Counted from the first letter of the stretch, positions 18 through 44,217 are shown. The stretch: 64,000 nucleotides of DNA from Haliotis cracherodii (GCF_022045235.1 NW_027266266.1:38688001-38752000); one strand, 5' to 3'. Made by a program: numbers and translations. Notes: generated by a model not told the origin, from the sequence alone.

Positions 18-3000
18 GATGCTGTAGACTGGTTGTCCTCTCATCCAAGTGTACATGGAGAGGGTATCGGTGTGGTCGGTGGCTCCAAGGGAGGTGAACT
101 GGCCTTCCTGCTTGGCATGGCCACTGACAAGGTGAAGGTAGCTTAATCGTCAGTGAGATACCTCCAAGACACACTTAATCAACTTAAATATTCAAAGGGT
201 TAATCAGGTGTTGAAATGAGGATATGTGTGTATATCATCAGTATAGGTAACGTATAAATTCATGTGAAATCGGTAACAAAAACTAGACGGAATCATCCGA
301 GGAATCAATGTAAGGAACAAGTATTAGTCAAATATTCTGAAGTATATATCGAATTATGCTTACACTCAACACAATCAAAAGTCATTTTCCCCACACACTG
401 CTTTCACTGTGTATAAAACTTCTTTCACTAAAGGTTAACTAGAGCCTTACTATCTTGCTTTTATTAACAGGTGAAGGTTTTGGTGAATATCAGTGGCCTT
501 CCAGTTTATTCATTTGAGGATGTAAAGAAATCAGGAGAGATTTATTGGAAAGGGGTGAGGTAAGATTTTGATGTATTATATACACGTCATATTCTTTGGG
601 AGTCTGTAAATCTCATCTCCCCAGTGCCTCATACCGCAACTAAATCATTTGTTGATTGTATGGCCAAAAGGTCGGTTGAGCATGGCAATAATGTATTTGA
701 TTTTGAAACCACCTATATATATATTTATCATATAATGGGTAGGTCGCCCTCGTCATTCGGCGATCGAATCAGAATTAACCATCAGGAATCTGGATAAACT
801 ACAGAGATAATTGCTTTCATTATCAAAAGAACAGTCTAATATACTGAAAATCAGTGTCTAACTGTGACGTAGCTAAGGCATTTTATAAGTTTGGGTAACT
901 TTGGAGATATAAATTTCGACACAATTTTGCGAGGGCACGAGGCCTAGCCAAGCGGGATCAGTAGCCATATCTGTGCTTGTAGACCTCTGCGGCTTGAACC
1001 TTTCTCCACAAATTAAAATAGTTGGATTTGGCCGAAATATGTTTGAATTGTTACCTTGTTTCGTTTTGTCGCTGTGTGTACATCTGACTACACTTCTTAA
1101 CGTTACGACAGGACAGACCGACTGTCAACAACGTCTGACCGTGGCCGTGACGTCTCATAGACTAGGGTTAGAGTAGCTTCCCTTTGACAAAGGGCAGTTA
1201 CTCTAGCAGACAGACCGATGGATTGCCGAGAAAGGCAATTAAAAACAATTATTGTTTTGCGTATATGTTGCTTCACCACTGTATAAGAAAGAGATTTCAG
1301 TTGGAACTATATTGGCTACTGTCACTGTCCGACTGACACATCACTTACCCTGTGACGTATTAAATATTAATCCGCGCATTCCAGGAAAACTCGCAATATT
1401 TCGGTAATGTTTTTGAGAGAGGGAAAGCGAGTTTGAAGCACAGAATTAAAGAATGACATTATATGATAAAGAGGTTATCACGCTTGTGTGTTTGGGGATG
1501 GTAAATAGCCTGTATTAGCAATAAACACTATGTATTTAGCTCCCCAAGGGTCGCTAAATACAATGTTTATTCCTAATGCAGGATATTTACCATCCCCAAA
1601 CACACTCACGTGATAACCTCTATGACAAGTATAATGAACGTTCTTTCATAAATGGATGCTGTCTCAACCAGCAGCAACTTCCCCTGACGTATTACTTGTG
1701 TGTGTCTTACTTACTAGAACATAAACACTTTTCAAATATTGCAATATTTCAAATCTGCAGATGAGGTAACGTTGCTTTCATTCTTGTATCACAAACTTTA
1801 ACATGGTAAAATCATTCTCATAATGATCATTGTGCATATACTTTTTCCACAATGTTGAGAGCGATTGATCACATCGATGTATGTATATTCAATAGTTCAG
1901 CAAATACATTTATTTGTACGTTTCCCACAAAATTGATTCCAGCCGATTTATATTTAGTGTGGATATCACGAAACTGAAACACACAGATGAAGGTTTTTAC
2001 ACCAGAGATGCTGTTCCCTATGACTCTGAGGTTATTCCGGTTAGTTGCTTCTCTCAAAGTATTGCCAGAATTCTATATGTTTTCAAAATGTTTTGCAAAA
2101 TATTGTTCAGCTCTTAAAAGAGGAAGAAAAATAACCGATGAGTGGTCTCTGGTGGGTTCCTAAATGTCTCCGACCTGCGTCATTGTGGCTTTCATCTCCT
2201 ATAATGTGTTTAACAAGACTCACTCAAACTTGTATCATGGTGAGTAGTTCATAGTCAAGCAGTTTGACATGGCTGATAAATAAAAGAACGTTATATCTCA
2301 ACATGAAAATACTTTCATACACTTCTGTGACGAACATGTGAACATTTTTGTTATTCTTTTCAAGTTCTTTTGCCATCTCATGGCATGTGCCAAACTATTC
2401 TACAGGGCCATACGAACGAAGTCGAAGGAAGCATAATCCCCAATGTGTTAATGACATAACAACATTCACGGGACTGCTAAATATTCAGGTTTTATAGCTG
2501 TAGAACAATTATTGGTTTTTTTAAGTGCCAGATTGGTAACATAATCTAACATTGGTCCATTTCACGTCAGCTAATGTGATAATGTATATATGCAGGCTTG
2601 GAAGAATAATGCCCAAATATTATACCTTGTTGGTGACGATGATGGTCTCTGGAAAACTGACCATGCTAACACATTCATGGAGAGTTGCCCCAAAGAGAAA
2701 AGGAAGACTATTGAACTTGTCTCCTATCCAGGAACAGGTCACCTCATCGAACCTCCATATATGCCTGTGAATAGAGCACAGTACCATCCATTGCTTGGTG
2801 AGTAATCAAGCAACACCATGTAACTATTAGATCAATTCTTCGTTTCCTTTCGAAGTAGCAAGATGTTCGTAGATTTCAAGGATATCCTTGAAATCCCTTG
2901 GTAGTATCTTTGGAACATTGATCATGAGAGTTCATTGGCCGACAAAAAGTATTGTTTCAGGATATAGAGATTTTATTGTTTTCTTTCAAACATGGTCTTG

Positions 3001-17270: not shown

Positions 17271-17509
17271 ATATCATTTTTGAACCATAAAACAAGTCTG
17301 TAAAATGAGTAATATTATTTTAATCTACAGAACTTGTTCCTGATTGATCACAGTGGATCTGAGAAGAAGAAACTATTTACACTAAAAAAATAATCCCATC
17401 TTTTGTAATCTACGACATTTAGATTATGCAGTCATGCGTCAGGTGCAGTTGCATATCAGACTGTTAAAGGCAGTATATTCCTCATTTTAATTTTAAACTT
17501 TAAAACCAT

Positions 17510-17850
17510 TGACACTGACTGACTCCTGCTGGGGTCCGTGCAGGAAGCAAAAGGACTGTACGTCCCCATGGTGTCTGACCTGGTCATCTACCTTCAGTTA
17601 CTGGCGATCGATAGCCCATATTCATATTGTGTTGTTAACGAACATTTCATTCTTTAAAATGTTCTCAACAAGTTTTAAATCGAATCCTTGGTGATCTAGC
17701 TATTATACTGATCATCGACGATGGTTTTCGTTCAGTCTAAACATATTTGGTATTTTTGTACAACTTCTCGTCACGACATGGCTGAAATATTGCCGATGTG
17801 ACGTAAAGCATTCACTCACTCACTCACTCACTCACTCACTCACTCACTCA
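17510..17850 (+). mobile_element. 5'-truncated Nimb/I-like LINE 3'UTR with long (ACTC)n tail (second copy 18931-19271)
   Basis: Same 3'UTR as 4905-5211, followed by about 9 ACTC units. Confidence 0.8.
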
Positions 17851-20800
17851 TACTTGTTCAGGTGAACCCTTTACATGCATTTGTATGTTTGTGACAGTTG
17901 CTCACCTTCCCGTGAACATGTGGACTATTGTTGGAATCGTACAATGTACTATGATTTGGGAAGACATTTCTATGATGAGGTTTTAAATGAAAATGTTTCT
18001 GTCGCTGTTATTAGCATGATTATGGCAAGGGATTTCGCTTGAATATACATTCAGGTAATTTATTTGAATGCGATAAGTAGAATGTAAACATGTAAGTTAT
18101 TTATTTTGAAAAACCAATTTACTCCTGTATTACTGATATGTTATTTGTCATCTAGAAGTTTACGAAATATTAAATGCATGGGAGCCGGTGAAAGAAATAA
18201 ATATTTTCATTTAGGAAAGCTGTCAAAAACATAAATACATGAATGGAATGTGAAAGTGATGTATATTGGAATGCGTCAGCTTGCATTTGATCATGTTTCA
18301 AATCAAATCCAAGTGACGAACCATTCAAAACAAATTTTGAACATATAAATGGTAAATTTGATATATAGTATCGTCCTCATCATAGTTCATATCAATTTTG
18401 TCACGCCTTCGTGGTCAGCCCTGGGAGCGGAAGGTGCGGGGTTCGATCCCCTGCCGGGTCATACCAAAAGACGTCAAAAGATGGTACTTGTTGTTATCTT
18501 ACCTGCCTGCATTAAGGGTCTAAAACAAGGACAAGTCGGCTCGGAGTCAGTGTACTCAGTGTCTGAGTGGGGTATTCATCTTAAACAGCGGCATGGTATC
18601 TCACTATAAAATCGGCTGTAGTCCGGACTAGTACAAGCACGCATGAACACAAACACGCACGACGTCAAACCCCATTTCACCTCACCTCACCATATCATTT
18701 TTGAACCATAAAACAAGTCTGTAAAATGAGTAATATTATTTTAATCTACAGAACTTGTTCCTGATTGATCACAGTGGATCTGAGAAGAAGAAACTATTTA
18801 CACTAAAAAAATAATCCCATCTTTTGTAATCTACGACATTTAGATTATGCAGTCATGCGTCAGGTGCAGTTGCATATCAGACTGTTAAAGGCAGTATATT
18901 CCTCATTTTAATTTTAAACTTTAAAACCATTGACACTGACTGACTCCTGCTGGGGTCCGTGCAGGAAGCAAAAGGACTGTACGTCCCCATGGTGTCTGAC
19001 CTGGTCATCTACCTTCAGTTACTGGCGATCGATAGCCCATATTCATATTGTGTTGTTAACGAACATTTCATTCTTTAAAATGTTCTCAACAAGTTTTAAA
19101 TCGAATCCTTGGTGATCTAGCTATTATACTGATCATCGACGATGGTTTTCGTTCAGTCTAAACATATTTGGTATTTTTGTACAACTTCTCGTCACGACAT
19201 GGCTGAAATATTGCCGATGTGACGTAAAGCATTCACTCACTCACTCACTCACTCACTCACTCACTCACTCATACTTGTTCAGGTGAACCCTTTACATGCA
19301 TTTGTATGTTTGTGACAGTCGCTCACCTTCCCGTGAACATGTGGACTATTGTTGGAATCGTACAATGTACTATGATTTGGGAAGACATTTCTATGATGAG
19401 ATTTTAAATGAAAATGTTTCTGTCGCTGTTATTAGCATGATTATGGCAAGGGATTTCGCTTGAATATACATTCAGGTAATTTATTTGAATGCGATAAGTA
19501 GAATGTAAACATGTAAGTTATTTATTTTGAAAAACCAATTTACTCCTGTATTACTGATATGTTATTTGTCATCTAGAAGTTTACGAAATATTAAATGCAT
19601 GGGAGCCGGTGAAAGAAATAAATATTTTCATTTAGGAAAGCTGTCAAAAACATAAATACATGAATGGAATGTGAAAGTGATGTATATTGGAATGCGTCAG
19701 CTTGCATTTGATCATGTTTCAAATCTAATATCTCTCAAGTACATATTCAACAATATGCATTCTCTCCATTAAATCATATGTTGTTGTTTTTACTCTACTA
19801 ATAGGGCTCACCTACCGAAGCATCGGCACTTGTTTCATTTCAGTTTATACACAATCCGATATGATGTTTGTATTACGGGGAAGGTATTATACTGAGGCAA
19901 TTTTGAGACTCGTTGGCATCCGACGACAAACATATTCCAGCTTGGCGTGTCTCAATGTCAACCCCCGCGTTGCACTAGTTGACGAGAGGGTCTCCATCAC
20001 AGCCAACAATCTTCAGCCATTACAGCGAGTGACAGTACAGGCGTACGTGAAAGAAGGAACGGCGGTTTTCGGCTCATGTGGCCATTTTCTAGCAGACGAG
20101 GAAGGACAGATTGATGTCAGCCAACATGCTTCAATTGGTGGAACATACAAAGGTATTTGATTAATCTCCATAGAAATAATATAAAAAGTGAGGATTAACA
20201 ACCTTAATTCTTATTCTACCAAGTTCGTACACAATAAGATCGTATTCGTGTAGCTCTCTGTTGGACCGCATTGTATTCGGCCTCGTTTTCATGTGATTAC
20301 TCTTTACACAACAAAGATGAAGTAGAAGTCGGTCCTCTCACTCTTGAGCAGAAGCTTGCCTAACTTGTACCTCATTACTGGGAAGGTATATATGATAGTG
20401 GAGGTACATTGGTTAGTATTCACATGTAACTCATAAACAGTATAGGTAACGGAGAAATTCCTGTGAAATCAGCAACAAATGATAGAAGGAATCATAATAG
20501 TGATACATTCGATTACCAGAACCAATAAGGAATCAAAGTAAAGATCAAGTATTCTTCCAATAGCCTGAAGTATATATCGAATTGTGCTTTCATGGATAAA
20601 CTTAACATTCCAAAGTCATTTTTCCACACACTGCATTCACTTTGTATAAAAACTAATTCAATAAATGTCAACGTGGTGTCTTACTTTCAAGCGCGTTTAA
20701 TAACAGGTGAAGGTTTTGGTGAATATCAGTGGCCCTCCATTTCATTCGTTCGAAGATGTGAAGAAATCAGGACAGATTTATTGGAAAGGGGTGAGGTAAG

Positions 20801-21639
20801 TTTTGATGTATTATATACTGAAGGCCACAAAGGCTGTTGAGCATGGAAAACATGTACTTGTACTGGAAACCATCCGGAAACCTTTTGCCCAGCACACCCC
20901 TTTAACACTGACCTCACCTTGACAGGTAGTAGGATGGGTCGGATCCTATCAATCGGCTGGTCATGCCAAGCCCTGTGCATGATATTGTGTATGCACGAGT
21001 TTGATGTATCTACATATCTTGTTTGCTCAATGTATTACAACAAATTGTTGATGTAATAAATTGTCCTGTGTCTTATGCAAGAAGGCGGTGGCTTACGGGT
21101 CAATCCGGTGATGTCGCCCTCAAAATAATGTCGTCCCAATTTTTTATCATGAGCCGAACCAGTCTGGCATTTAGTTGGTAGGCACTTGCAGCTGTTCGTG
21201 TGATATTTCCTGGGGTACAACATCCCTGTATCCCTGGTGTCAGCACCCTGGACATCCGGCGCAATTCGTCAGTGTCGTTGTTGACACTCAGTGGTGGGTG
21301 GGGAGCAGGGATGCGAGGTGGAGGTGTATGTACCCAATCAACTTCGATGTTATAAATGGCAGTTCAGTCATGTGCCAACCTCTTGTCACAACTCTGTGGT
21401 GTGCCATCGTTGTGGTGACGGACACGAAAACACTGACTGTGAGAATGATGTCGAGTGAGCTAACTGTGATGACCCACATCCTGCCCTGTGTGCTGACTGG
21501 AATACAAAATATAAAAAGAAATATCACACTGAGATGCCCAAAAAATGTTAAGTGTTCAGATCTCAACTCCTTTCAATATTACAAACTCTGCTGCAGTCAC
21601 TCATTGTAGCAACATCCTCTATTACATGACAGGCTGACC

Positions 21640-22575
21640 TGACGTCATGACCTGTTGCTGTAACTTCAATCAGTATATCCCCAGTCACTCAGCCTCGTTC
21701 TGGATCTCAGGCAGACAGTGAGCCTGAGACAAAATCTCTTATGTCTGTTTCACAACCAGCCATCGTTCATTTTACAAAAAAAAGAAGAAGAAGATTGAAC
21801 AGAAAACAATCAAGTACTGTCTTTGGACCTCTGGATATGGAGGTTAATCTGTCCACACAGGAGTGAGTGAGTGAGTGAGTTGGGTATAACGCCGCTTTTA
21901 ACAGTATTCCAGTTATATCACGGCGTGTCAGCTTAATGTGGGAGGAAAGCCCGAAGTGATGCAGGTCTCAGACGTTTACCACTTCGGTGAAACCCACGAG
22001 CACGGGTATGGTGCTGACAAACCTAGAAACATAATCGGGGCGAACCGGGATTCGAACCCATAATCATAGGTTTCTGGCGTGCCCAAGGGACGCAACTCTG
22101 CACAGCGAATCGCGGCGCCTTAGACGACTGGGCCACCCGTGCCCCCCTGTCCACACAGGACAGGTGAAGAAGTAGCTCTTCCTCACATTCACCTGAAAGA
22201 TCTCCAAGTGAGCCACCATGACTCAATTGTCCAATATAATGCAATTGAATTGCAGAGGACTAAGACATACTTTTACCTAGATGCAAATATTGATTCGGGA
22301 TTGTCAACCATCAGCACTATGTCTTCGAGAAACCTACCTTAAAAGTACAGATATGTTTTCTTTAAGACAGTAAAGTATCATTGTTCTACTCGGCCGGCAG
22401 ATAAAGCAATGGGAGTCTTAATTGTCTTAGTGCGACAGGGCGTCATACATGACTCTGCCCCTCTTAATGCAAATCTTCAAACTGTTGCTGCTCGTCTGAT
22501 TCTGCACATCCCTCTTACACTGTGCTCCTTATATATCCCTACTTCCTCTGATCTTCGACAGTGCGATCTTCAATG
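21640..22575 (+). mobile_element. Nimb/I-like LINE fragment (ORF1 end / endonuclease start) interrupted by a SINE
   Basis: IMQLNCRGLR at ~22235 (APE start motif IQWNCRGL), then CLRETYL, LQTVAARL and LCSLYIP. Left boundary approximate. Confidence 0.7.
21863..22146 (-). mobile_element. tRNA-derived SINE family B, full length, with TSD
   Basis: Head GGGCACGGGTGGCCCAGTCGTCTAAGGCGC...GGGTTCGAATCCC and (ACTC)n tail. 14-bp TSD CTGTCCACACAGGA at 21849-21862 and 22147-22160. Confidence 0.9.
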
Positions 22576-24299
22576 ATTCACAAAATGATAATTGTGCATA
22601 TAGTTTTTCCCACAATGCCGAGGGCGATTGATCACATTGATTTATGCAAATCCAGCAGTCCCCCCGAGCGACAGTAAATAAAGTCGTCGATGAATATATG
22701 TCACATCTCGTTTGCCATAAAATTTTCTACTGATTTTTCTTCAGGATGGATGCTACGAAACTGAAACACACAGATGAAGGTGTTTACTTAAAAGACGCTG
22801 TTTGCTATGACAATGAGGTTATTCCGGTTAGTTTGGTCATCTCAGTATGTACTGCAGTATTCTTTTCATCAACCCGCTGGGGCCAGTATATGTGTGGTGA
22901 AATATATTATTCAGCTTCTCATAGAGGAGAAAACGCTTGTCTCTGGTGGGTTTCCTAAACGTCTACGACCTGCGTCACTTGTGGCTTTTATCTCGTATAA
23001 TGTTCGAAACATAATGTGTCACGCTCAAACTTGTTTCACGGCATGTGCCAAAATAATTCACCAGAGTGAGTGAGTATGTTTAGTTTTACGCCGTTTTTAG
23101 TAATATTCCAGCAACATCACGGGGGGGGGGGCATACTAGACATATTATACCCATGTCGGGAATCGAACCCGGAGCCCTAATTCCCCAGAGCCATCAGGGA
23201 GAATAGTTTCAAATTTCAATAATGTTTGTGCAAATGGTATAAGAAGGGTCATGGGAATGCTTATTATTCAGATTTAGCATTTTTATAAAAAAAAATTGTT
23301 TTTGATTTTCCAGGGAGGTAAATGTATTCATTGTACTTAACGTCAAGGTAATGTGATAATGTATATCTACAGGCATGGAAGAATAATGCCCAAATACTGT
23401 ACCTTCTTGGTGACGATGATGGTACATGGAAAACTGACCATGCTAACATATTCATGAAGACTTGCCCAAAAGAGAAAAGGAAGACCATTGAATTTGTCAC
23501 CTATCCAGGAGCAGGTCACCTCATCGAACCTCCCTATATGCCTGTGTACAGAACGCTGTACCACCCAGTGCTTGGTGAGTAAACAAGCATCACCATGTTC
23601 ATGGCGACACCTAAAGATTTGGTAATAATGAAACCACTCCTTTGCTTTGTTTTTCGAAGTAACAAGATGTTTGAACATTTCTAGGATATCCTTTGAAAAC
23701 TCTTAGCCATATAATTATAACATTGATCATGTGAACCAACTGGCCCAAGATATGTTTATTTTGAATCTTGGTCTTGTTGAAGATGTTGTCCAAAGATCTG
23801 GTGTCTGTATTGTTTACTTTGAACCTGGGTCTATGTAAAGATATTGGTCAAAGATATAAGGTCCAATTGCTCAAGTTGAGTAAACCTTATCGCAAATTAA
23901 ATTGGATTGAAAAGGGATTCGCAGTTCATTCATACAAGCATCCCCATATACACTATAGGTAATATGTTAGAAGTTCAGAGGTGGTTACAGCAACGAAACG
24001 CACTATGGACGGCAAACTGTTTTCCCACTTGATAACGTTTATTTTCCCATGACATTGGTCCAATTCTTGATGTCTCCTGTTATGATATGGCTGGAATAGA
24101 GCAGCGTAAAGTCATATTCACTCACTCACACATGTCCCTCGGTGAAATATCAACCATGTATCCTACAAAATTAGATATATTATACATCAGGAACAAAAAG
24201 GCCTGTTCATTTCTCTCATTGATATAATTTTCAGGCTTCCTCTAGATCTTCTATCATCATCAGTGTAAATTGTGTTCACACCCTCCAGTATGCAACATA

Positions 24300-27200
24300 T
24301 TTAATCAGGCTCAAAACACTCAACTCCAGCAGAGGCATTGTTAGAGACAGAGCCATTTGTCTGGCGGACATTTCAGACGAGGAGATAGTTGATAAACTTA
24401 CAAATCAAAATGTAACTTCTATCAAGCGCTTCACTTTAAATTAACAAGGTGGTAGAATGGAAAAGCGCAGCACGTATTTTATTCATTTTGCTTCGTGTAC
24501 TGTGCCCATATCAATGAAACCTGGCTCTCATTATATCGGAGTGGAGGTGTACGTTCCCACTCCACTCAGAACAACCAGTTCAAACTGTTACCATGCATAC
24601 TCATTCTGACGGTCAATCCACTGTGGCAACATTTTCCTCTCAAACAGTGAGTCACTAACAACCTGGGGTTGATCAACAAGCTGTTGAAGTTGATATACAT
24701 GTTGAATTGTTCGTATTCTCCTCAAAGATCCCCTACAGAACCACCATGAGCCAATCTCCTAATTTACGAATTCAGTGGAAATTCAGACGACTTAGGAACA
24801 ATTTTAATGAAGTACAACTATTAACATAATATCTTAAAGCATCAGCATTTAGTTAACAAGAAACATACCTTGAATAAAAGGATACATTTGAAATGTTCAG
24901 TCCGTTCAATTATTACATTATTTTTCACCTCCAGGTGATAAAGTCACTGGAGGCTCTTCCAATTCGGTTAGGCAGGGCATGATCCACAGCCCTGTTCCTT
25001 TTAAATACGCCCGTCATGTTGTTGCTGTCCGTCTCACTTGACAAATAACATTCCCACTTTGTTCCTTGTATACTTCTCCATTTTCAAATCATCAGGAGTC
25101 TGATCTTCAGGATTTATTTGACACGCACTCTAAACCCTTTATCATCACGGGTGATCTTAATGGACATGACCATCAATTGGGATGTTCCTATACTTATAAT
25201 AAAGGGAAAGTTCTCAAACATTGTATTTCTACAAGCTAAACATTCTTTTTCATCTAGGTATAATCCAAAGTTTCAGAAATATCAAAAACAACAAGAGAGA
25301 GAAAAAGTGAATATTCATTTTGAAAATGGCGAAGATTATAATGAGGTATTATCACTACTTTAACTACATACAGCCTTAGCCCAAGCTCATGATCCTGCAA
25401 CAGGAGCTGATGATATCCATTATCAGTTCTAAAAATGCTTGCCTGAATCATCTAGGGATCGATGCTCATGATATTTATCACTGGATTGTCCGGTCCAGAC
25501 TCGATTATTTACAGACCGCCGTCATATAACTGGAGTATTGCTGAGTGCGGCGTTAAACAACAACCAATCAATCATTCAGGGATATCCAGTGCGGTTTCCG
25601 TAAAAAAGCGAAGTACAATTGATTATCTGATTCGTTTAGGGGGGCACGGGTGGCCCAGTCGTCTTAGGCGCCGCGATTCCCTGTGCAGAGCTGCGTCCCT
25701 ATGATTGTGGGTTCGAATCCCGATTATGTTTCTATGTTTGTCAGCACCATACCCGTGCTCGTGGGTTTCACCGAAGTGTTAAACGTCCCAAATTAAGCTG
25801 ACACGCCGTGATATAACTGGAATACTGTTAAAAACGGCGTTATAGACCCAACTCACTCACTCACTGATTCTTTAGAATAATTCATTAAAATGATATTGTC
25901 AACAAACATCTATCTTTTTCGATTTTATAAAAAGCCTGTGATGCCACTTGGAAGCATTTCAAAAGATTTTCATGATTTTTGGTTGAGAGGATGTGTCTGT
26001 CACATTGTTCAGTATAAAAATATATGGTCTATCAAAAGTATTAAATGCCTCATTATTTGGGGATGATTGTCATATTTCATGTTGTGGTAAACATATGCAA
26101 ATCATTGAAAGACAATGACAGTTGTGTCTTAAAATAATTCTTCAATGGCCACTTAAGAATAGCTTTATGTGTTCAATGACCAAGACCAATTGTATACATT
26201 TCTGTCGAAATATAAACCCCATCAAGACTACTATTTGACGTTTTGGCCACATATAAATATCTAAAGAAAATTGCCTGAAGTCCCTAGAGTGGTTCAAGTC
26301 GTCTCAAATTCAAAGTGGGGAGGGGATCAGACAACCCTCCTTTACATATATAAATCATTAAGCCGCTAATAATGGACTATTGCTCCATCGTGTATGCTGG
26401 ACCTTGCAAGAGTAATTTAAAAATACAAGAGTCAATCCACCATCAAGGACTAAGACTGCCTTGTTGCCTTTCGTAAACAGCCTCTGTATTTAGGCCGATG
26501 AACCCTCATACTAAATTGTCTCTTAAATATGTCACTAATTTACATACCGATCCTTCCAATCCAGCTTATGTCTCGGATTTTCATCCAATCTACCCCCACT
26601 CTTTCAGGGACCACTTGGAATTCTGATCAAGTCCCATATTATAGAGCTCTGCTAATCTAGATCTATATATAATCTCTCCATATCGGCCTTTGTCTAGAAA
26701 TTTCCCCAACACGCTTTATAAAATCTGACATAAATCAATTAGTATTCCAACAGGAATATGTAGAATTAAGAAATGAATACGACACTCATCGTTCAATCTT
26801 TACTGATGTATCCAAGGACGGTGGCAAAGTAGCAAGTGCCACTTTCGTTGGATAAAAATATTATACTATCCAGAGTACCAGACAATAGCTCTTTTTTCAC
26901 TGCTGAGGCCAATGATATACTTACAGCCTTGGTGAACGTTCAACTACAGTCTGCATGTAAACAGTTTATCATCTTTTCTGATTCTCTGTCTTGTCTTCAG
27001 GCACTGTATAATGATCTTTGACTTATCCAATCATTTTAGATATTTTAGAACTTTACAGTCAAATTTCAACCGGCCAATACGGCATCGTCTTTTGTTCGTT
27101 GTCCAGTCATGTGGGAATAAAAGGTAACATTATGGCTGATGATGCAGCAAAAACAGTCCTCAACAAAAAAGTGATTACCACTTCTTATCCCATACAATGA

Positions 27201-28080
27201 TTATAAACATGTGATTAGATGTTACATCCGAGATCTCATGCAAAAGACGTGGGACAACCACGTATGTATACATAAGTTACATGAAACCAAATACCGGTTA
27301 CACCTGGTACGGATGTCAGTCCAGATTTAAACGATGATGTCTTATTGGCCATAGTAGATCAACCCATCAATGCTTAATAAAAGATGAGGATCCTCCATTC
27401 GGTATCCTTTGTGATGAAAGAATCACTTCCAGCAGTGTCGTATTGATTTTTTCCATCAAAAGAGATAAATATTTCATCCATCTTTTAATCAGATAATTGC
27501 TCTCTTAATCACTGTTTCTTTTTATAAAAGTTGATAAATTTTGATGTAGAAAGATATGTATTTGATGAATTGGTGGAATATGATTATTAACTGAGATTGT
27601 TAGTGGGCATGCCCTTGGTGGGGGTTGAAGTAGCGTAAAATAATTTGTATCCCTGTAAGCCCACCTCATTCACAGTACTGTAATGTCTTTCAATGTTTTT
27701 TTATCGAAGAATGTGTCTTTGTCTAATCTCTGGCTAAACCTAGTCCATAATCACCAGTGACTAAAGGGATGGTGTAAATCCTGCTAGAGAAGCATTTAAG
27801 TAGCAGAGGTATGGTAAGTCCCACTGGTCCCACCTAGTGGAGTGGCCTAACTTTGGTTGCTGATGCTCTATTGCCCGTTTGTATATTGTATTGTTATATA
27901 TAGTAATATATCGTCATGGTTTTTATGCTGGGTTTAATATAAATCAGTGATACTCTATTTCTTTTACTGTCCTTTGTTGGTAGGTTTTTAAGTGGTCTGA
28001 ATGCCTTTATTATTCATGCATAAATTGTTCTCGTCATGATATCGCCATGTGGCGTTAAAGTTTAACGCTCTCACACACTT
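24300..28080 (+). mobile_element. Long degenerate Nimb/I-like LINE (ORF1, EN, RT, RNase H, 3'UTR remnants) in the last intron of copy B; contains family C (~25455-25575) and family B (25640-25865) SINE insertions
   Basis: ORF1 VEVYVPTPLR; EN IQW, GDLNGH; RNase H FFTAEA, IFSDSLS, SHVGIKGNIMADDAAK; 3'UTR similar to 38770-39325. Confidence 0.8.
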
Positions 28081-30416
28081 AAACAGGTACACTGGTAAGC
28101 ATGTATTTTACATCGTGAGCAATTTCTCAATGACAGGCATACCAGACTTAACTGTTTATATGCTTCCCCAACAGGCATGACAATTGTGACGGGAGGACAT
28201 CCTGAAGCTCATGCTGCCGCCCAGGAGGACGCCTGGAGAAGACTTCTCCACTTCCTTCAGAAACATATCGCGTAGAAACCTTTGACGTCTGACCTTTGCT
28301 GATCGCACGAGGGAACTAAATGTCGTTCTAATAAAAGTAATAAGATACAATAAAGTGGAGATCAGAAAGAAAGTCACAGGAAAGTACACTGAAAAACTTC
28401 ACAAATTTGCCGAGGGAAAAATCACAGGGGAAATATCACAACTATTTTGAATAGAAGAGTTTAGTGGTAGTTTCATGGTAAAACAAATTAATGCTTTATA
28501 AACCCTTATTTAGAAGCCAGTTTCACAAAAAAACAATTATCAAAGCAAAGTATTCGAGTTGTGAGGCTATTAGCAGCAATAATGTTATGTTGTTTCACGT
28601 CAGATCAACAAATCCACAGGAACATGGTGTTTGTATAGCATATGGTAGGTACTATTCAGTTATCTATTATGAATTATTACTACCAAAATCAGGGAGATTA
28701 TACTCTCCATAATATTAGCTAATTAACAATTTTCTTGAAAATGATATACTGAACAAGAAAAGTTCCTTTAACATTGCCCGCCGTGATATTGCTGGGATAT
28801 TGCTAAAAGCGGCATAAAACCGTACTCACTCACTCCTGTGACATTGAATAAGATTTAATGCAAATTTATGTTTTCTACCAAATCTGAAACAATTTCGGTT
28901 TGCAACAGATAAAAGACTCCTGTAAGTGCTCAAAAGGAAAATGCGTGATTTCATAAATAAAACATGAACATGCCAAAATGTCAATTTACAAATCAATAGC
29001 GTGTGTGTCCACCTCTGGTTGCGATGCAAGCAACACATCTTCGTCTCATGGAATGGACAAGGCGTCGCTCAAAGTCATGAATGTATGGATGGATGTATGG
29101 ATGGATGGATGGATCGATGGAGTGTTAAACAGCATGCTACCCCGTTATCGGTGATTATAAATCCCGGGCATCTAGGGACGTGTCAACACACTACCTCCTC
29201 TTAATAAAGTCAAGAAAGATCAACTGGATATTCTTTTGGCTCCAATGGTGAAAGCATTTTAAGTTCCTCACAAAATACCTGGACATGATTCCTTTACGGG
29301 GAAATTTTTTTTTAGTGTTTGTTTTGATGTTTCAAGTCTATTTCTTGCCCCTTCATCGCGTGAATGATAAACGCACAATGCGTTTTCCTGAAACGTCGGT
29401 ACAAGCAACACAGAAGTTGTTAATCGTAAAAGCTGCATGTTTTTACCTTATATATTTTTTTACAGAAGAGGGTCCTATTCCTAAGTATTCCAGGTAAGCA
29501 GAAGTCCGCCCTTAGTATACCTCCCTCACAAATTCATTGTTAAACCCTATCAATAATCACAAGAAATCCCTGCTGAAAACTAGCTGTTCGGTTCCGACAA
29601 AGCATGTGTTTATGAATCGCTATAAAATGTTGATGTTACCAGGTTTTCGCGAAAAGGAGAGTATATCCTGCCCCACGTTCAGGCTTCCGTCCCAATCACA
29701 TATAGGCAAGCAGAATGATGAACCGAAAAGACACGGGAACTCACGGGACATAAGACATGCATACATCTTCCTGCCGTAGAAGCTTCTACATGAAATGGAT
29801 ATTTATTACATTTTGAACGGACCCTTGTTTAAACCTACACTGAAGAAAATGTGTGTAGATACTAAACACAAACCTACATATGTTCCTAGTCTTCTAATTG
29901 TACCGTGTTTAGAGGCCTTAACATGTTTAGTATTGTGTTTCAGTCTGAACAGAACAGTCACCATATTAAGCAATATCACTTCATAAAAAGCACCCCATGT
30001 ATACATTTGGTGAGCATTGGCAAAAAATGATACAAAAAAATTGTTCGGTTTTAATGATCATTGCTTCTGCTAAGGTACATTGTGCTGTGAAGAGGTGTTT
30101 GTATTCGTATGTTCATGAGGATGTGATGTATGTCCGCTGTACTGAATATATGAGGTAGTAGATAGTTCTTAATGAGCAAATCTCTAAAATGAAAGACAGG
30201 AAATGATTTAGTTTCCAGTGAGCACAGCGTCTCCATTTGTGTTCACATACATAACTCTAACCAGCTCAGAGTGTACATCAGTTCAGGCTAAAACACAACC
30301 TCAGCAAAACGTCACCGATTTCATCGGGCTACAGTGTCATCACGTTCACGAAAACGTTTGCTTAAGGTCGAGCGAAAACCTCATATATAAAATAGGGAAA
30401 CTCAGATTTACATGTA

Positions 30417-37359: not shown

Positions 37360-37691
37360 TGGCAATAAGATGAACATATACGTTCAGCGATTATGCGGCA
37401 GAAGTAAATGTTGTAGAATGAGTTAACTAGATCAACCATATTTAATCAGTGCAGTGATATACATGTATCTGCAGCCTGCTTTTGGCTTGTAACAAGTTGT
37501 TTTCTCTGGGCGGTCGGGTAGCCTAGTGGTTAAAGTTACAGGGTTTTTGTAGTTGAAGGTACAGTTTTAGCTGTAATAGCCGAAGAAAGAAGGCATAAAA
37601 GATAGTTTAAATTTGATTTTCATGACTTTCTGTTATACATATGCAGAAGCTTACGAGAGACATCACCAGCAAAGGCCAAATATATTCCTAA

Positions 37692-40600
37692 ATGGTTTGT
37701 CTAAACATCAGTCCAAAGGTGGCACTGGTTGACGAGAAAATCTCCATCACAGTTACTGGCCTTTGTCCGCTACAGCGAGTGACAGTACAGGCATGGGTGG
37801 AAGAAGGAAAGGCAGTGTTCAGCTCATGTGGCCATTTCCTGGCAGACCAACAAGGACAGGTCGATATTGCTCAACATGCGTCATTGGGAGGATCATACAG
37901 AGGTAAATAAGTGCCAATGCTACCTCATTTACTTCAACGGATTGCTGTAAACATATGCTAGCTCTAACGATTCTTAAGAAGCACAGTGATTCATCTACAG
38001 GCATCCGCCTATCACCTTTCAGGCATCATAAATGCCCCTGTCAGTCACAGATTTTTTTTTGTATTGTTAAGGTCCTGTAACATTTCCTGTACTGTAAACA
38101 TTCATACGTACTCAGCATTCTTCATTACATATTTTATAGCTAATTTCCAAATTGAAAGGTTTCATCCAGAAATTGGTACGAACAGAACTTAATTGTTAAA
38201 TCAATACATAACCTCACAAGATTAGTGAACAATTCTTGATATTTAAGAATCACACAGTACTCTCCTCACTGGCCAATACGACATCAACCTTTATTGGTTA
38301 CCTTGTCATATTGGTATTTACTGGTAACACACGAGCTGATCCTGCAGCTAAAGCAGCTCGTGATAAATCAGTCTCTCATTTCTCAGTTCCCTCCAGTGAT
38401 TTTAAACAATGCATCAAGGAACAGGTCTGTATTTTGAAGCAGAAAAAATTAAACACCCAAGTGGGTACTTACACCCAAATAAGGTTACACCTACATGTAC
38501 TTGGGTTGCCAGTCCAGACAAGACGAGGTTGTTTTGCGACGATGTCACATTGGCCATAGTCGTGATACCCATGAATATTTATTGAAAGGTGAGGATCCTC
38601 CATTCTGTATCCCTTGTGGTGAGAGAATCACTATCAAGCATTTCCTGCTTCTCTGTGTTGATTTTGCCATCACAAAGGATAACTTTTTCAACGTCTCATC
38701 CATGAAGGATTTTTTTTTATATCAGTTCACATTTATTTGTTAGTTTTGTAAAAGAAATTTATTTAATTGATAAATTTTGATTAAAAGATTTATTGTAAAA
38801 AGTAGATGAGTTTGTGAATGAATTAATAACTTAGATTTTAAGTGGCTATACCTTCAAAGGGGGTTGAAGTAACGTAAAACAATTGTCCCCTGAGAGAGTA
38901 CGTCAGTAATCAAAGTATTTTTCACATCTCCGTGATTTTAATCGTAGAATACTTGTCGAGTTTGACTGGTTGGCTTAATTATCTGACAACTGCCAGTGGC
39001 CAAAGGGATGGTGTATGTCCTGCTGGGTACCACGTAGGTAGCAGAAGTACCGTAAGTCCCCATGAACACTAGTATGGTGCCCTGACTTTGGTTGCTGGTA
39101 ATTTATAGCCCATTTCTATGATGTAGTGTTATGAATAGTCATATTTTAGGAATAAATGCCAGTTATGAAGATAAATCTATTATACTCTAGTTGTTTTACT
39201 GACTATTGTCGACGGGTTTTTATGAACTCAAAATGCCTTTAGTCTTGATATATAAATTGGTCTCGTCACGATGTGCCTGAAATACTGCCGATGTAACGTT
39301 AAATCGTAACTCAACCACTCACTCGCACTGACAATAACTGACATTGTTAAAAAGAAAAACTAACGGTACGAACAAAATATATATAGTATTATAGCTAAAC
39401 TCGACAGAATTATCAATAAACCGCCCACATGTTATCAAAAATGAGCGGGCCACTGCAACTTGATAATGCCCTCATATTGCTTGAGGACGGGCCATTATCA
39501 CGCCCGTTGTTAGGTGACGTCATAGGATAGGGATAGGTGACATCACGTTCAATAGTGACGTCATCTGGTTTGTTCTATGAAGTTTTCATATTTGCAAAAG
39601 TGGGTCAGTAACATTCGTGTTGATTGCAGTAAATGTTTCAAAACCGATATTATTGTTTCTTTTATTTGATAACAAATTCCAAATCAAATAGATAACAAAT
39701 TCCATCCATTTTAGCTATAAGAACGGTTACGCTATTTTCAGGGCATTATCATTTGCAGAAGCCGTCGCGCAGTTAATCGAAGAACTCGAGCTTCTGCAAA
39801 TGATAATGCCTTGAAAAATAGCGTTTCCCTTATAATAATGATGAAAAGGTGGTGATTTGCCTTGTTAAGACATATTTTCTTTGAAGTGTCATTGAAATGT
39901 CACTGCAACTTTGAAAAAATATCAAATGTCATGTTTGTCAGTGTATCTCTTTTCATTCAGGTATTGACAGTATGGGCCTGTTCTGGAGTATGAAGCCTGT
40001 CCCAGGCATGTCAAAGGCCGCGCTTCTCAGGAAGGTAGACGTGACAACACCTCTTGTCTTCAGACTATCAGTCATGGATGACCACATTCCCTTTGCTGAC
40101 CTCCAGCAGCTCACGACAGTGGTGCTGGTTGCCGACGAGGTACAACGCTGGTACAAACACGGTTCTGTGAGGAGGATTGTCATGCGTGAAGGTTCTCTGA
40201 GAGGAACCCTCTTCTTGCCTGCAGGTAAGACCCCATGGTTCGAACACGTATGCGTATAGTTTCGCCTCTTTGAAAATACAAGGATTCCTTTAATTGATAT
40301 ATGGCTGTAACATATTTCAGTATAAACCTGTATAACTAGTGTGTAACAAAGCGGGTCTTTGGAAAGATTCACATCTCAGATATGATAAACAGTTTGAATT
40401 AGTTTTTGTGTTAGTACAACATTGTAAAGGACGCAATTTAATTATAACAACTTGCACAGCTTATATTACATCATTCATTGTGAACAGGTGAAGGGCCATT
40501 TCCTGGAGTGCTCGACATGTTTGGTTCAGCTGGAGGTCTGGCGGAGTTCCGTGCTGCCTTGTTGGCGTCTAGAGGCTTTGCTTGCTTTGCTCTTGCCTAC

Positions 40601-43600
40601 ATCAGATATGATGATCTGCCTACTTCATTGGCTGGCATTGACTTTGAATACTTTCTTGTAAGTTGCTTAAATGAATATGCTTAATACTATGAAAGATGTT
40701 CGTACCCTGAATATGTTTTATTATGTACATGGACAATTACGTTACCTAACAGAGCATGGAAACTTTAAAAAAAACTATCAATTCTGAAGATAATGAATCG
40801 TGAATCTCAATCCTAGAAATGTTGGGCTTATAACCACAACCATCAAACGGTATTTACCTGATAATATTTAACTATGTACTTACAATCTAACTTAGCACAT
40901 ATCTATTCAGCATGTCCTGCAAACAAAATGATGTATCCCTGCAAACAAAATGATGTATCACAGTCTTTTCTGGAACAAATCATTATTGTCAATACATGTA
41001 CAAGCCCCCCTCCCCCCCCCCCCCTCTCAACATGGCATGTCAACTAATCAGGTGAACGTGATTGAACAATGAAAAGTCAAAATATAGTTGATACAGATTT
41101 GAAATAGGTGTGTCTATTAGGCATGTTCTCTCTAACGTGTATTGTCTGCATTCAATACCAGCTTTCCCAACCATAACAGATACAATTCTCTCAATAGGTG
41201 AAGGCTTTGGTGAATATCTGTGGTGCTCCGGTGTATGGATCTGACGAACTAAAAAAGTGTGGACATTTGTTTTGGAAAGGGTTCAAGTAAGCATGTCTAT
41301 GTCTTCCATGCGTTGTATTTAATAGCTGTGCTCAGCAATAATCAAACTATATAATGGCTGTCTTAGATAATCTCAATATCACTGAGCCTTTTTGCAATGG
41401 AGGTCGAAGTGTTAGACATCAGTTTTGGAATAGCTCAGAGCAATCAACATTATTAACCGAGCCTGACCCCCTGATCTAGTGTTGTCATCTGCTGGGTACG
41501 TACTCCTAATCGGACCCACACAGGCGACAACACGTCAATAGTCACCTTTCGTTATGATCTCTGGGTATTCATGTCTTAAATATGGTCGCCACTGTTGCAA
41601 CCAATGTCATTTTGTTGGGAACAGTTGGAATTTTGTAAGCAGTAAACCTGAGAGCCTTATTTGATATGATTTCATTTTCAGGATGGATGAAAGTAAATTG
41701 AGACAAACCGATGAAGGTGTTTATTTGAAAGACGCGGCTCGCTATGACACTGAAATCATACCAGTGAGTGTATTTATTCACAGCAATCCACATATTTTGT
41801 GAGTCATTTCTTGTCACTTTTTGTTTATGTCAGGGGTACAGCTTCATGATATAACCTGTGTTGAACAATTACTAGTACATGGACATCAATAAGCATGTAG
41901 ACAGTATAACTGTTCAGGCAAATATTCATAAAACGTCAGTATAAACGTAATTAATACGGACAGTGGGTTTCCAAAACTCGTTATGGAATAGTGCCAGAAG
42001 TTGATATGTTCCTGCATTTGGATCGATTTTACTTATTTCATGTTTAGAATTAGTAGGTAAATTGGACAGAAATAGACGTACATCATAGATCACGAGGTAA
42101 TGGATGAATTCATTGTGTGAGCTGTGCATTTTCTTTTAGTAGTGTAAAAATGAAAATGCTGAACATACTATTAGGCTGGGTGATTTATGTCGTGGAAGTC
42201 AGGAAGGAAAAGGATGAATTTGCTTTTTTTATTCTTATTCATTAAAGTTTAATATATTCAAGATGAAAGGCCCACATAATAATTGGTTACAAAATGTTAA
42301 AGTTAAGGTGATCAAAGGAAATACATGTACAGTGCATATGACGTGAATGAGAATATTTTGGGATTGAAATAGCTTTTTACAGAATTGGAGCAGAGACGGG
42401 TGACAAGAATAGTTACACAGTTTCAGTTGATGTTGCCACTTTTGGTGCAGGGGAATTTGGAACTGCAATTGGTTTAAGTCTGACTTCCCGTATAACTTAA
42501 GATCGTTTCGATAGTACCATGAAATAATAACAACCATGTTCTGATTTTTACACAAAGACCGTAAGACCGACGTAACACTCTTTATAGGTGAAATACCAGA
42601 CATCTCTATGGGGAGCGATACTAAATTAGGGCTAGAATAATAAGGGTCAGCTAGGCTAGAAATAATTCACATATTTCATTATTGTTTTCTCTGGTTGATT
42701 TTGTCTTTATACTGCAATGGGCCATCGGTATAATTCCATGCCTCAGGCCCTTGGCATATCTATTATCTCTTTCATGAAATCCAATGCAGGATCGATAGGT
42801 TCTACTGCGGTTTCGTGGCTTTTTCTGAAACGATTTTAGCAGTATGACTCTGTGCATCTCCCTTTGGCATATTTATGGCATTCTCTTGTAGGTACGATGG
42901 GGTTTGTACACTCGGGTATTAGGTATTGCTGCTTCATGACACTATTTAAATGTCTTTGCAGGCCTGGTCGAATAATGCCCAGATCTTATACTTGTGTGGT
43001 GAAGATGATGGCGTATGGAGAACAGACTTTTCCAATACATTCATTGAGACTTGTCCTGAAGAGAAGAAAAATAACATTGAACTCATCATCTATCCAGGTA
43101 CAGGACATCTTATTGAGCCACCATACATGCCCGTGTCCAGAGCAATGTTCCATAAAGTCCTTGGTGAGTGTTTATTTGTATTAGCCACACTTACGTGTAC
43201 ATGTAGCACACAGTACAACCAAAGACCAATACAGAACAAACCGAACACATTCTTGTAGTCTGTCACTCAAATTCATTGTAGACGTCTCACAGTGCTGCAA
43301 CAAACTGACCACTTTGTACTAAGATATCGGCATCTATGTGTGCCTGTGTGTGCGTGCGTGCATGCTTGTGTGCTGTTTTGCGTGCTAGCGTTTCGGGACA
43401 TATATTTTCGCATTTAACTTCTCCACGTTGTCTTAGTTGTTGATCTCAGCTTATTCTCGTGATTTGATCATTATTATGTCTTTTGTAACCAGGAGAAGGA
43501 CCAAAGTTCAAGAAACTGTCATCAGGTTAATTTTTGCCCCAAACAAGTTACCATTCACCTTTCCGCAACCGCCGTTTCTTTACTTCACCTTATGATGTGA

Positions 43601-44217
43601 CATTTGCGCTATGCATTCTACCTCGTGTCACAAGAATCATATCATATCCATGCTTGCAACGATATTGCATCCTCCAATGTGGCAATACACAGCAAATCTA
43701 TATAGGTTTCTGTTCCATAGTGACATGACTATACACCAGTAGCTCTAGTTTGTTTTTTTATTAAATACCATATTGTAATCGAGATTGTTTGAACGAGGCT
43801 GTAATATGTTTAAACAGAAAAGAATTTAACATGGTCATTGACTTAGTAACGCTGATCGATATTGCGATGATGAAATATATTTAACTGAGCAACAACAATG
43901 ACGGCTAATTTTTCAACAGAGTTAGATCGATACGTGTTACTTATACTGTTCAATTGTATTTGTATTTTAGTCTGTTTCTCAATATGACATATTACATATT
44001 TGACCAGGTAAGCCTTTATATTCAATCCTGATAAATTCTTCACTGACAAACTTGTACTGTACTCGACTCTGGATGTGCTTCCCTAACAGGCTATACAGTG
44101 GTGATGGGAGGAAAGCCTAAAGCTCATTCAGCAGCCCAGGAGGACGCCTGGGGAAGACTTCTTCACTTTCTCCAGAAACACTTGCCACATGAGCATCACA
44201 CATCTGGTCGGTTATAG
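37692..44217 (+). CDS. ACOT/BAAT-like copy C, 381 aa, in frame but lacking the catalytic-Ser exon (exons 37692-37902, 39961-40224, 40488-40657, 41198-41286, 41682-41763, 42962-43163, 44090-44217)
   Basis: Seven GT-AG exons sum to 1146 nt with no stop or frameshift. Motifs: [83 protein letters not shown], ending TSGRL*. Confidence 0.85.
38210..39325 (+). mobile_element. 5'-truncated Nimb/I-like LINE (RNase H end, C-terminal CCHC, 3'UTR)
   Basis: [12 protein letters not shown]; [37 protein letters not shown]; tail GTCACGATGTGCCTGAAATACTGCCGATGT..ACTC. Confidence 0.85.
39389..39834. mobile_element. Non-autonomous DNA element with a terminal/subterminal IR pair and terminal hairpin
   Basis: TTATAGCTAAA (39389) pairs with TTTAGCTATAA (39710-39720), followed by the palindrome CGCTATTTTCAGGGCATTATCATTTGCAGAAGC / GCTTCTGCAAATGATAATGCCTTGAAAAATAGCG. 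Confidence 0.7.

What the first reader, a model, noticed from the sequence alone, without database searches (positions are those of the whole stretch)
40658..41197. Intact ACOT/BAAT paralogue that has cleanly lost only its catalytic-serine exon (candidate pseudoenzyme)
Seen: copy C splices from ...IDFEYFL (donor 40657, phase 0) to VKALVNI... (acceptor 41198, phase 0). The 540 bp between contain no trace of the 114-nt DAVDWL...GxSKG...K exon that precedes the VK..VNI exon in copy A (18-131). That exon is phase 0-0, so the ORF stays open: 381 aa versus 419 aa with the exon. All other exons, all splice sites and the catalytic Asp (GEDD) and His (YPGTGH) are intact. Known: type-I ACOT/BAAT enzymes use a Ser(Cys)-Asp-His triad with the nucleophile in GxSxG. 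Inference: copy C is a catalytically dead acyl-CoA-binding or regulatory protein, a very recent loss-of-function allele, or a gene that obtains the exon from elsewhere. Losing a core strand-helix unit could also simply unfold the protein.
Basis: partly seen in the sequence, partly recalled or inferred. Interest (0 to 1): 0.8.

Follow-up and report, generated by a model that had tools for sequence, protein, structure and literature searches.

The report
Thioesterase gene with deleted active-site exon
One old member of a tandem family of acyl-CoA thioesterase genes has recently lost, through a genomic deletion of about 96 bp, most of the exon that carries its catalytic serine, while sister species still have and express that exon; this looks like an ordinary young loss-of-function lesion, not a cleanly evolved "dead enzyme".

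Summary
The core observation holds. Copy C (window 37692-44217) has seven exons with canonical splice sites and an open 381-aa frame. It has no GxSxG exon between 40657 and 41198, and no G-x-S/C-x-G motif anywhere.

The last 19 nt of the serine exon and its GT donor survive at 41033-41053, directly after a poly-C pyrimidine tract (41005-41028). So a deletion of about 96 bp removed the acceptor and about 95 of the 114 exon bases.

Spliced, RNA-like contigs from two related organisms (B and D) are 96-98% identical to copy C's exons. They continue from exon 3 into DAVDWLA... and enter the VK exon from ...FLLGMSTNQ. Organism B genomic contigs show exon sequence upstream of 41033. The exon is therefore present and spliced in the congeners.

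Copy C is an old paralogue under purifying selection (dS about 0.7, omega about 0.25), and it has no other lesion. The deletion is therefore recent.

Best reading: a young loss-of-function deletion in a birth-and-death ACOT array. Neighbouring copies B and Y1 are also broken.

Not shown: fixation in the species, expression of the 40657>41198 junction, or any function of the shortened protein. The scan's earlier notes on this gene concern its N- and C-termini, not this deletion.

The parts
37692..37902 (+). Copy C exon 1 (ATG; first half of the Bile_Hydr_Trans N-terminal domain)
   Evidence: Pfam PF04775 positions 1-57, E 8.8e-15. Donor GT. Its last bases appear as the loose end before exon 2 in RNA-like contigs.
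39961..40224 (+). Copy C exon 2 (second half of the N-terminal domain)
   Evidence: PF04775 positions 60-126, E 1.3e-11. The junction to 40488 is seen in contigs of X20 and X18 (table 5).
40488..40657 (+). Copy C exon 3 ([11 protein letters not shown]...IDFEYFL), the last exon before the missing one; ends in phase 0
   Evidence: Aligns to human ACOT2 chain 3hlk_A residues 172-225, E 1.7e-17. AG/GT sites.
40658..41197 (+). Merged 540-bp intron: the former upstream intron, the exon remnant and the former downstream intron
41005..41028 (+). Pyrimidine tract C6-T-C13-TCTC. Probably the polypyrimidine tract of the lost acceptor. The left breakpoint of the deletion lies between 41012 and 41032.
   Evidence: Sequence. 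An organism B genomic contig follows the intron up to 41011 (record 2).
41033..41051 (+). Remnant: the last 19 nt of the catalytic-serine exon (...GMSTNQ)
   Evidence: blastn to the exon ends of Y2, A, Y1 and Z. Identical to the loose end TGCTTGGCATGTCAACTAATC(AG) of the X20 transcript contig. Organism B DNA reads ACTGGCCTTCCTGCT just before 41033 (table 7).
41052..41053 (+). Orphan GT donor of the lost exon
   Evidence: Aligned with the paralogues' donors, AAG|GTGAA.
41198..41286 (+). Copy C VK exon (VKALVNICG...), the strand after the missing unit
   Evidence: tblastn to the VK exons of A and B. Junction 41286>41682 in RNA-like contigs.
41682..41763 (+). Copy C exon 5 of the present model
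   Evidence: Junctions in X20 and X18. tblastn.
42962..43163 (+). Copy C exon with the catalytic Asp (GEDD) and His (YPGTGH)
   Evidence: PF08840 positions 113-175, E 3.3e-14. Aligned to ACOT4 and ACOT2.
44090..44217 (+). Copy C last exon, ending ...SGRL then stop
   Evidence: PF08840 positions 179-208..
18..131 (+). Copy A serine exon (reference for what is missing): DAVDWL...GGSKGG...TDK
   Evidence: PF08840 positions 8-42. Aligns to ACOT2 3hlk_A residues 228-257, including GISKGG.
20434..20438 (+). Copy B deletion junction. 1678 bp are missing relative to copy A, removing exon 2, exon 3 and the serine exon.
   Evidence: blastn of B against A: B 19801-20434 = L001:5927-6560 (95%); B 20438-20818 = window 239-583 (76%).

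Best explanation
Copy C is an old, formerly functional type-I acyl-CoA thioesterase (ACOT/BAAT-like) gene in a tandem array.

In the genome assembled here, a recent genomic deletion of roughly 96 bp sits right after the intron's poly-C pyrimidine tract. It removed the 3' splice site and about 95 of the 114 bases of the exon that encodes the strand, nucleophile elbow (GxSKG) and helix unit. The exon's last 19 nt and its donor are left stranded in what is now a 540-bp intron.

Without an acceptor the remnant cannot be spliced in. The expected mRNA joins 40657 to 41198 in frame. This is inferred, not observed. The resulting 381-aa protein would lack the nucleophile and a core part of the alpha/beta-hydrolase sheet, so it should be catalytically dead and probably unstable.

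This makes copy C a young loss-of-function allele, or a nascent pseudogene, in a birth-and-death gene family. It is not an evolved pseudoenzyme. Whether the deletion is fixed or polymorphic in the species is unknown.
For: - Remnant of the exon plus its donor at 41033-41053.
- Spliced RNA-like contigs of organisms B (X20) and D (X18), 96-98% identical to C's exons, run from 40657 into ATGCTGTGGACTGGCTGGCC (DAVDWLA). They reach 41198 from ...CTTCCTGCTTGGCATGTCAACTAATC(AG). Organism B genomic contigs carry ACTGGCCTTCCTGCT before 41033. No 40657>41198 joint appears in those runs.
- The remnant is still identical to organism B's exon end, and all other exons and splice sites are intact. This points to a recent event.
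- C is an old paralogue under purifying selection: dS 0.68-0.80, omega 0.23-0.32 against A, Y3, Y2 and Z.
- All other complete paralogues keep the exon with G-x-S-K-G.
- No direct repeat flanks the junction that could collapse an assembly. The junction is unique in the genome, and no intact C-type exon lies elsewhere.
- The missing segment corresponds to ACOT2 3hlk_A residues about 227-264, including GISKGG. S294 is the catalytic serine of human ACOT2, with D388 and H422 (PMC10804956).
- The same array holds other decayed copies: B has a 1678-bp deletion and is out of frame, and Y1 has stops and frame breaks.
Against: - No read-level proof from the source individual was possible. The only independent organism A run laid (X2) has no listed contig across 40992-41071, so neither the deletion nor an intact allele is shown in a second individual.
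- No RNA of organism A holds the gene, so exon skipping is only inferred.
- An in-frame, otherwise perfect gene is also what a functional shortened protein would look like.
Confidence: 0.75

Rival explanations
1. Assembly or consensus artefact. The real genome has the whole exon, and the assembler or polisher dropped about 96 bases next to the C6TC13 homopolymer tract.
For: The breakpoint abuts a long poly-C tract. Short-read contigs of both X2 (organism A) and X10 (organism B) break at that tract. No independent organism A contig listed spans the junction.
Against: Homopolymer errors are normally a few bases, not about 96. No direct repeats flank the gap that could cause a collapse. Run X1, the probable source, holds 0.99 of the sampled words of the stretch. 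No alternative contig with the intact exon exists in the 80-contig assembly.
Confidence: 0.1
2. Functional pseudoenzyme. The in-frame, exon-less 381-aa protein is made and retained for acyl-CoA binding or regulation.
For: The lost exon is phase 0-0, so the frame stays open. All other exons, splice sites, and the Asp and His are intact. The few listed substitutions shared by B and D against the window are mostly synonymous (a small and biased sample).
Against: The dead state is not conserved, because congeners B and D splice the exon in. The intact remainder is expected from recency alone, given about 3.3% intron divergence between A and B. The deletion removes the central strand, elbow and helix of the alpha/beta-hydrolase core, which should destabilise the fold. 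This last point is inferred from general knowledge of the fold. No organism A RNA run holds the gene.
Confidence: 0.08
3. The deletion is one allele of a heterozygous structural variant, and an intact functional allele still segregates in the species.
For: In X2, the contig covering 40498-40991 has k-mer depth 5.6, against 11.6 and 9.51 for the flanking contigs. A further short contig joins 41070 to 41155. Contig 18 starts with 22 letters that do not fit the window. All three hint at structural heterogeneity here.
Against: The depth differences are within what about 10x data can give by chance. No intact-allele contig was listed for X2.

This is a sub-case of the best explanation rather than a true rival. 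Its confidence is conditional on the deletion being real, so it is not additive with the other figures.
Confidence: 0.4

Closest known systems
Type-I acyl-CoA thioesterases / BAAT (human ACOT1, 2, 4, 6; mouse Acot1-6), alpha/beta-hydrolases with a Ser(Cys)-Asp-His triad, encoded in tandem clusters
   Same: Same two-domain architecture: Bile_Hydr_Trans plus BAAT_C. Exon peptides align to the ACOT2 and ACOT4 structures. The Asp and His motifs are conserved. The tandem cluster organisation matches that of the human 14q24.3 and mouse clusters (PMC10982514).
   Different: Copy C has no nucleophile motif at all, and BAAT_C positions about 8-42 are missing. The array here is larger: at least 7 copies on contig C3 and more on C45.
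Human ACOT6, a truncated member of the type-I cluster
   Same: It is a cluster member that lost part of the protein. No full-length enzyme has been detected for it (PMC10982514).
   Different: According to that review ACOT6 lacks the N-terminal domain. Copy C keeps both domains but lacks the internal catalytic-serine unit.
Young unitary pseudogenes or loss-of-function deletion alleles in birth-and-death tandem gene families
   Same: A single recent disabling deletion in an otherwise intact, long-conserved gene. The ortholog is intact in sister species, and neighbouring copies (B, Y1) are at later stages of decay.
   Different: The lesion happens to leave the reading frame open, because the skipped exon is phase 0-0.
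Alpha/beta-hydrolase-fold pseudoenzymes (for example neuroligins and other non-catalytic family members; from my own knowledge)
   Same: Loss of the nucleophile while the rest of the protein is retained.
   Different: Known examples substitute the catalytic residue but keep the strand-elbow-helix scaffold, and they are conserved across species. Here the scaffold itself is deleted and the state is not conserved in congeners.

Membership tests
Type-I ACOT/BAAT (PF04775 + PF08840) | N-terminal Bile_Hydr_Trans domain | tested here: met
   Exons 1 and 2 match PF04775 positions 1-57 and 60-126, E 8.8e-15 and 1.3e-11.
Type-I ACOT/BAAT (PF04775 + PF08840) | Complete C-terminal BAAT_C alpha/beta-hydrolase domain | tested here: not met
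   Only positions 113-175 and 179-208 match in copy C. Positions 8-42, matched by copy A's exon 18-131, have no counterpart.
Type-I ACOT/BAAT (PF04775 + PF08840) | Nucleophile Ser/Cys in G-x-S/C-x-G | tested here: not met
   No such motif in the 381-aa translation. The exon is absent except for a 19-nt remnant.
Type-I ACOT/BAAT (PF04775 + PF08840) | Catalytic Asp and His | tested here: met
   GEDD and YPGTGH align with GQDD and YPGTGH of ACOT4 3k2i_A and with ACOT2 3hlk_A. Triad residues of ACOT2: S294, D388, H422 (PMC10804956).
Type-I ACOT/BAAT (PF04775 + PF08840) | Thioesterase or acyltransferase activity | not testable with these tools
   Needs an enzyme assay.
Evolved pseudoenzyme | The catalytically dead state is conserved in orthologues | tested here: not met
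   Orthologous transcripts of organisms B and D contain both ends of the serine exon. Organism B DNA has exon sequence before 41033.
Evolved pseudoenzyme | The dead form is expressed | tested here: inconclusive
   No RNA run of organism A holds the gene. No 40657>41198 joint in the runs laid. Contigs cannot show absence.
Evolved pseudoenzyme | Purifying selection after the loss | tested here: inconclusive
   Only 12 listed exon differences could be classified, covering 9 codons: 4 synonymous and 5 non-synonymous. The long-term omega of 0.23-0.32 predates the deletion.
Young pseudogene / loss-of-function deletion allele | A disabling lesion absent from orthologues | tested here: met
   The deletion removes the acceptor and about 95 nt of the catalytic exon. 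The exon is present in congeners.
Young pseudogene / loss-of-function deletion allele | The lesion is real in the genome and present in the population | tested here: inconclusive
   The junction is unique and has no flanking repeat. The independent organism A run X2 has a hole at 40992-41071.

The most novel reading that the evidence does not exclude
In this species an ancient, conserved and normally expressed ACOT paralogue has been converted by one small deletion into an in-frame, nucleophile-less protein. That protein is still made and is kept for a non-catalytic role such as acyl-CoA or partner binding. This would be a pseudoenzyme caught at birth, with the catalytically active orthologue still available in sister species for direct comparison.
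Probability: 0.08. Interest if true: 0.55.

Novelty: new member of a known kind. Interest (0 to 1): 0.25.

Why it matters
As it stands this is an ordinary event: a recent deletion disabling one copy of a multi-copy metabolic gene family. It matters mainly for annotation. A gene predictor will call copy C an intact 381-aa thioesterase, although it has no nucleophile.

It is a well-dated example of how an in-frame "dead enzyme" model can arise from a splice-site-plus-exon deletion. If the deletion proved fixed and the protein expressed, the pair of species A (dead) against B and D (active) would be a natural experiment on the first step of pseudoenzyme evolution.

Tried and rejected
- I looked for the serine exon elsewhere in the window by tblastn and for a C-type exon elsewhere in the genome by pattern search. 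There is none, so 'exon supplied from elsewhere' is rejected.
- I looked for any open AG...GT cassette of length 3n in the 540 bp. Only three short, meaningless candidates turned up. Every exon ending at the orphan donor is out of frame or has stops. A replacement exon is rejected.
- I tried to find short ORF fragments carrying a C-type serine exon in public protein collections. The query was the genomic open frame around paralogue Z's exon. This route to genotype other individuals failed.
- I tried to read polymorphism in organism A from run X2, but its contigs leave a hole at 40992-41071.
- Literature searches for ACOT pseudoenzymes gave nothing specific.
- All searches were done exon by exon, and the 381-aa length and motif check were computed only inside a script.

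Full report
**Setting**

The window is G000:C3:38688001-38752000. It lies inside a tandem array of type-I ACOT/BAAT-like genes.
- Pfam BAAT_C and Bile_Hydr_Trans matches define at least seven copies on contig C3: Z on the minus strand, then Y1, Y2, Y3, A, B and C. More copies lie on C45.
- Copy A starts upstream of the window. Its serine exon is window 18-131.
- Copy B runs from 19942 to 28269, and copy C from 37692 to 44217.

**Checking the observation**

Exon 3 of copy C ends ...GIDFEYFL at 40657, followed by GT. The next coding exon starts VKALVNICG at 41198, after AG.

tblastn with copy A's DAVDWL...GGSKGG...TDK exon finds only copy A in the whole window. Every structurally complete paralogue (A, Y3, Y2, Y1, Z and three C45 genes) has this exon. 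The five C3 copies and one C45 gene carry G-x-S-K-G; the other two C45 genes carry G-x-S-x-G.

The seven exons of C are 37692-37902, 39961-40224, 40488-40657, 41198-41286, 41682-41763, 42962-43163 and 44090-44217.
- They have canonical AG/GT sites and compatible phases.
- They sum to 1146 nt = 381 aa plus stop.
- They contain no G-x-S/C-x-G motif.
- GEDD and YPGTGH align with the Asp and His regions of human ACOT4 and ACOT2.
- No open cassette exon of plausible size lies in the 540 bp.

The 540 bp are not free of traces. Positions 41033-41051 read TGGCATGTCAACTAATCAG and are followed by GTGAAC. This aligns with the last 19 nt and the donor of the serine exon in Y2 (TGGCATGACAACTCATAAG|GTGAAC; 28 nt, 86%, E 1.3e-4), A, Y1 and Z.

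Directly upstream is a pyrimidine tract, C6-T-C13-TCTC-AACA (41005-41032). The lesion is therefore a genomic deletion that removed the acceptor and about 95 of the 114 exon bases. The 3' end of the exon and its donor were left stranded.

If the intron originally ended ...CTCTCAACAG, the deletion is 96 bp. That assumption is plausible but inferred. It is not a clean exon excision.

**Evidence from other organisms** (the single read-laying run)

Runs X20 (organism B) and X18 (organism D) give contigs with introns removed. Joints are seen at 40224>40488, 41286>41682, 41763>42962 and 43163>44090, all GT..AG, so these are transcripts.

The contigs are 96-98% identical to C's exons: 9/263, 7/174, 0/81 and 3/202 differences. 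The VK exon is more diverged, at 8/91.
- At 40657 they do not join 41198. They continue with (G)ATGCTGTGGACTGGCTGGCC, which encodes DAVDWLA.
- Before 41198 they carry ...CTTCCTGCTTGGCATGTCAACTAATC(AG), which encodes ...FLLGMSTNQ. That end matches the window's remnant and no paralogue.
- Genomic contigs of organism B (X10) follow C's introns at about 96.5% identity. They carry ACTGGCCTTCCTGCT immediately before 41033. One of them follows the upstream intron into the poly-C tract, up to 41011.
- No 40657>41198 joint was reported in any run.

Hence the orthologue in two related organisms has the exon and splices it in. The poly-C tract predates the split. The deletion arose on the lineage of the assembled genome.

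**Age and history**

C is not a recent duplicate. Nei-Gojobori distances, summed exon by exon, give dS 0.68-0.80 and omega 0.23-0.32 against A, Y3, Y2 and Z. These values are the same as among the other copies. So C was a long-maintained functional gene.

The remnant is still identical to organism B's sequence, and nothing else in the gene is broken. With about 3.3% intron divergence between A and B (58 differences in 1755 aligned bases), an intact remainder is what recency alone predicts. It is not evidence of constraint.

Only 12 exon differences were listed by the tool. They fall in 9 codons, 4 synonymous and 5 non-synonymous. This sample is too small and too biased for a branch test.

**Consequence for the protein**

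Exon 3 aligns to ACOT2 chain 3hlk_A residues 172-225. The lost exon aligns to residues 228-257, including GISKGG, and to BAAT_C positions 8-42. In human ACOT2 the triad is S294, D388 and H422 (PMC10804956).

[quoted passage not shown] The next exon (VKALVNI) is the following strand.

An exon-skipped protein would therefore lack both the nucleophile and a buried core element. Catalytic death is certain. Misfolding is likely but inferred.

Skipping itself is inferred too. The remnant has no AG. The nearest upstream AG, at 41003-04, would give a 47-nt frameshifting exon.

**Artefact or real?**

Several points speak for a real deletion.
- The junction region is unique in the genome.
- No intact C-type exon lies on any other contig.
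- No direct repeat flanks the gap that could collapse an assembly.
- The probable source run holds 0.99 of the sampled words.

Several points leave doubt.
- The gap abuts a long homopolymer.
- The one independent organism A run laid (X2) has no listed contig across 40992-41071.
- X2's contig 40498-40991 has about half the depth of its neighbours.
- Another X2 contig joins 41070 to 41155.

I put about 0.85 on the deletion being real in the assembled haplotype. I cannot say whether it is fixed.

**Context in the array**

Copy B lost exon 2, exon 3 and the serine exon through an independent 1678-bp deletion (B 20434|20438 = A L001:6560|window 239). Joining its exon 1 (ends in phase 1) to its VK exon (starts in phase 0) breaks the frame. 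Y1 has a stop in exon 1, frame breaks in exon 2 and no detectable Asp/His exon. The family is in birth-and-death turnover, and C looks like the newest casualty.

**Comparison with what is known, and verdict**

The gene belongs by descent and architecture to the type-I ACOT/BAAT family, which forms tandem clusters in mammals as well (PMC10982514). It fails two defining features of an active member: a complete BAAT_C domain and the nucleophile motif.

It does not meet the criteria for an evolved pseudoenzyme. The dead state is not conserved, and no expression has been shown.

The best-supported reading is a young loss-of-function deletion, fixed or segregating. Interest is low to moderate. The main practical value is a warning for annotation.

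**Limits**
- Everything was done exon by exon.
- The word search for short exon-bearing fragments found nothing.
- The reads tools were limited to one call each.

Noticed in passing
window 19942-28269 (junction at 20434|20438): Copy B is a pseudogene. A 1678-bp deletion relative to copy A removes exon 2, exon 3 and the serine exon, and the exon 1 to VK join is out of frame. Its 5' part is 95% identical to copy A but its 3' part only 76%. This suggests a mosaic from gene conversion or unequal crossing-over.
   Followed up: partly
L005 (G000:C3:38641501-38651500): Paralogue Y1 has an in-frame stop in exon 1 (…ADH*GQ…). Its exon 2 is split over three frames, exon 3 has gaps, and there is no detectable Asp/His exon. 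It looks like an older pseudogene in the same array, yet it keeps an intact-looking serine exon.
   Followed up: no
window 40498-41170, run X2: In an independent individual of organism A, the contig over 40498-40991 has depth 5.6, against 11.6 and 9.51 beside it. One contig joins 41070 to 41155 (84 bp skipped). The 3459-nt contig starting at 41072 has 22 leading letters that do not fit the window. This may be a heterozygous structural variant around the deletion. It is unexplained.
   Followed up: no
window 40914-40959: A near-perfect tandem duplication of about 22 bp (CCTGCAAACAAAATGATGTATC twice) sits in the same intron. Organism B's contig shows no gap there, so the duplication is shared with organism B.
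   Followed up: no
window 43337-43372: A (TG)n-like microsatellite in the intron draws very high summed contig depth (about 1000-2100) in the DNA runs. It breaks contigs in all runs.
   Followed up: no
window 41198-41286: The VK exon of copy C differs from organism B's transcript at 8 of 91 bases (K19N, C21S and L24S among them). Neighbouring exons differ at 0-4%. This may reflect local gene conversion with a paralogue or relaxed constraint.
   Followed up: partly
window 37683-37694 and 44203-44217: Copy C's ATG at 37692 is preceded directly by an in-frame TAA. The protein ends ...HHTSGRL, a PTS1-like tail. Copies A and B read LACLNVNP at the matching place, without that ATG.
   Followed up: partly
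L013/L014 (G000:C45:69560501-69574500, minus strand): In this ACOT paralogue, exon 3 and the serine exon are contiguous with no intron between them (L013 6761-6594 and 6593-6480). Its introns hold stop-free stretches open in several frames at once (for example 8917-9984), as expected of minisatellites.
   Followed up: no
window 17500-19300: Two near-identical copies of a segment about 1.4 kb apart (for example 17590-17846 and 19011-19267) appear in the self-comparison. They may be a tandemly duplicated repeat or a transposon fragment between copies A and B.
   Followed up: no
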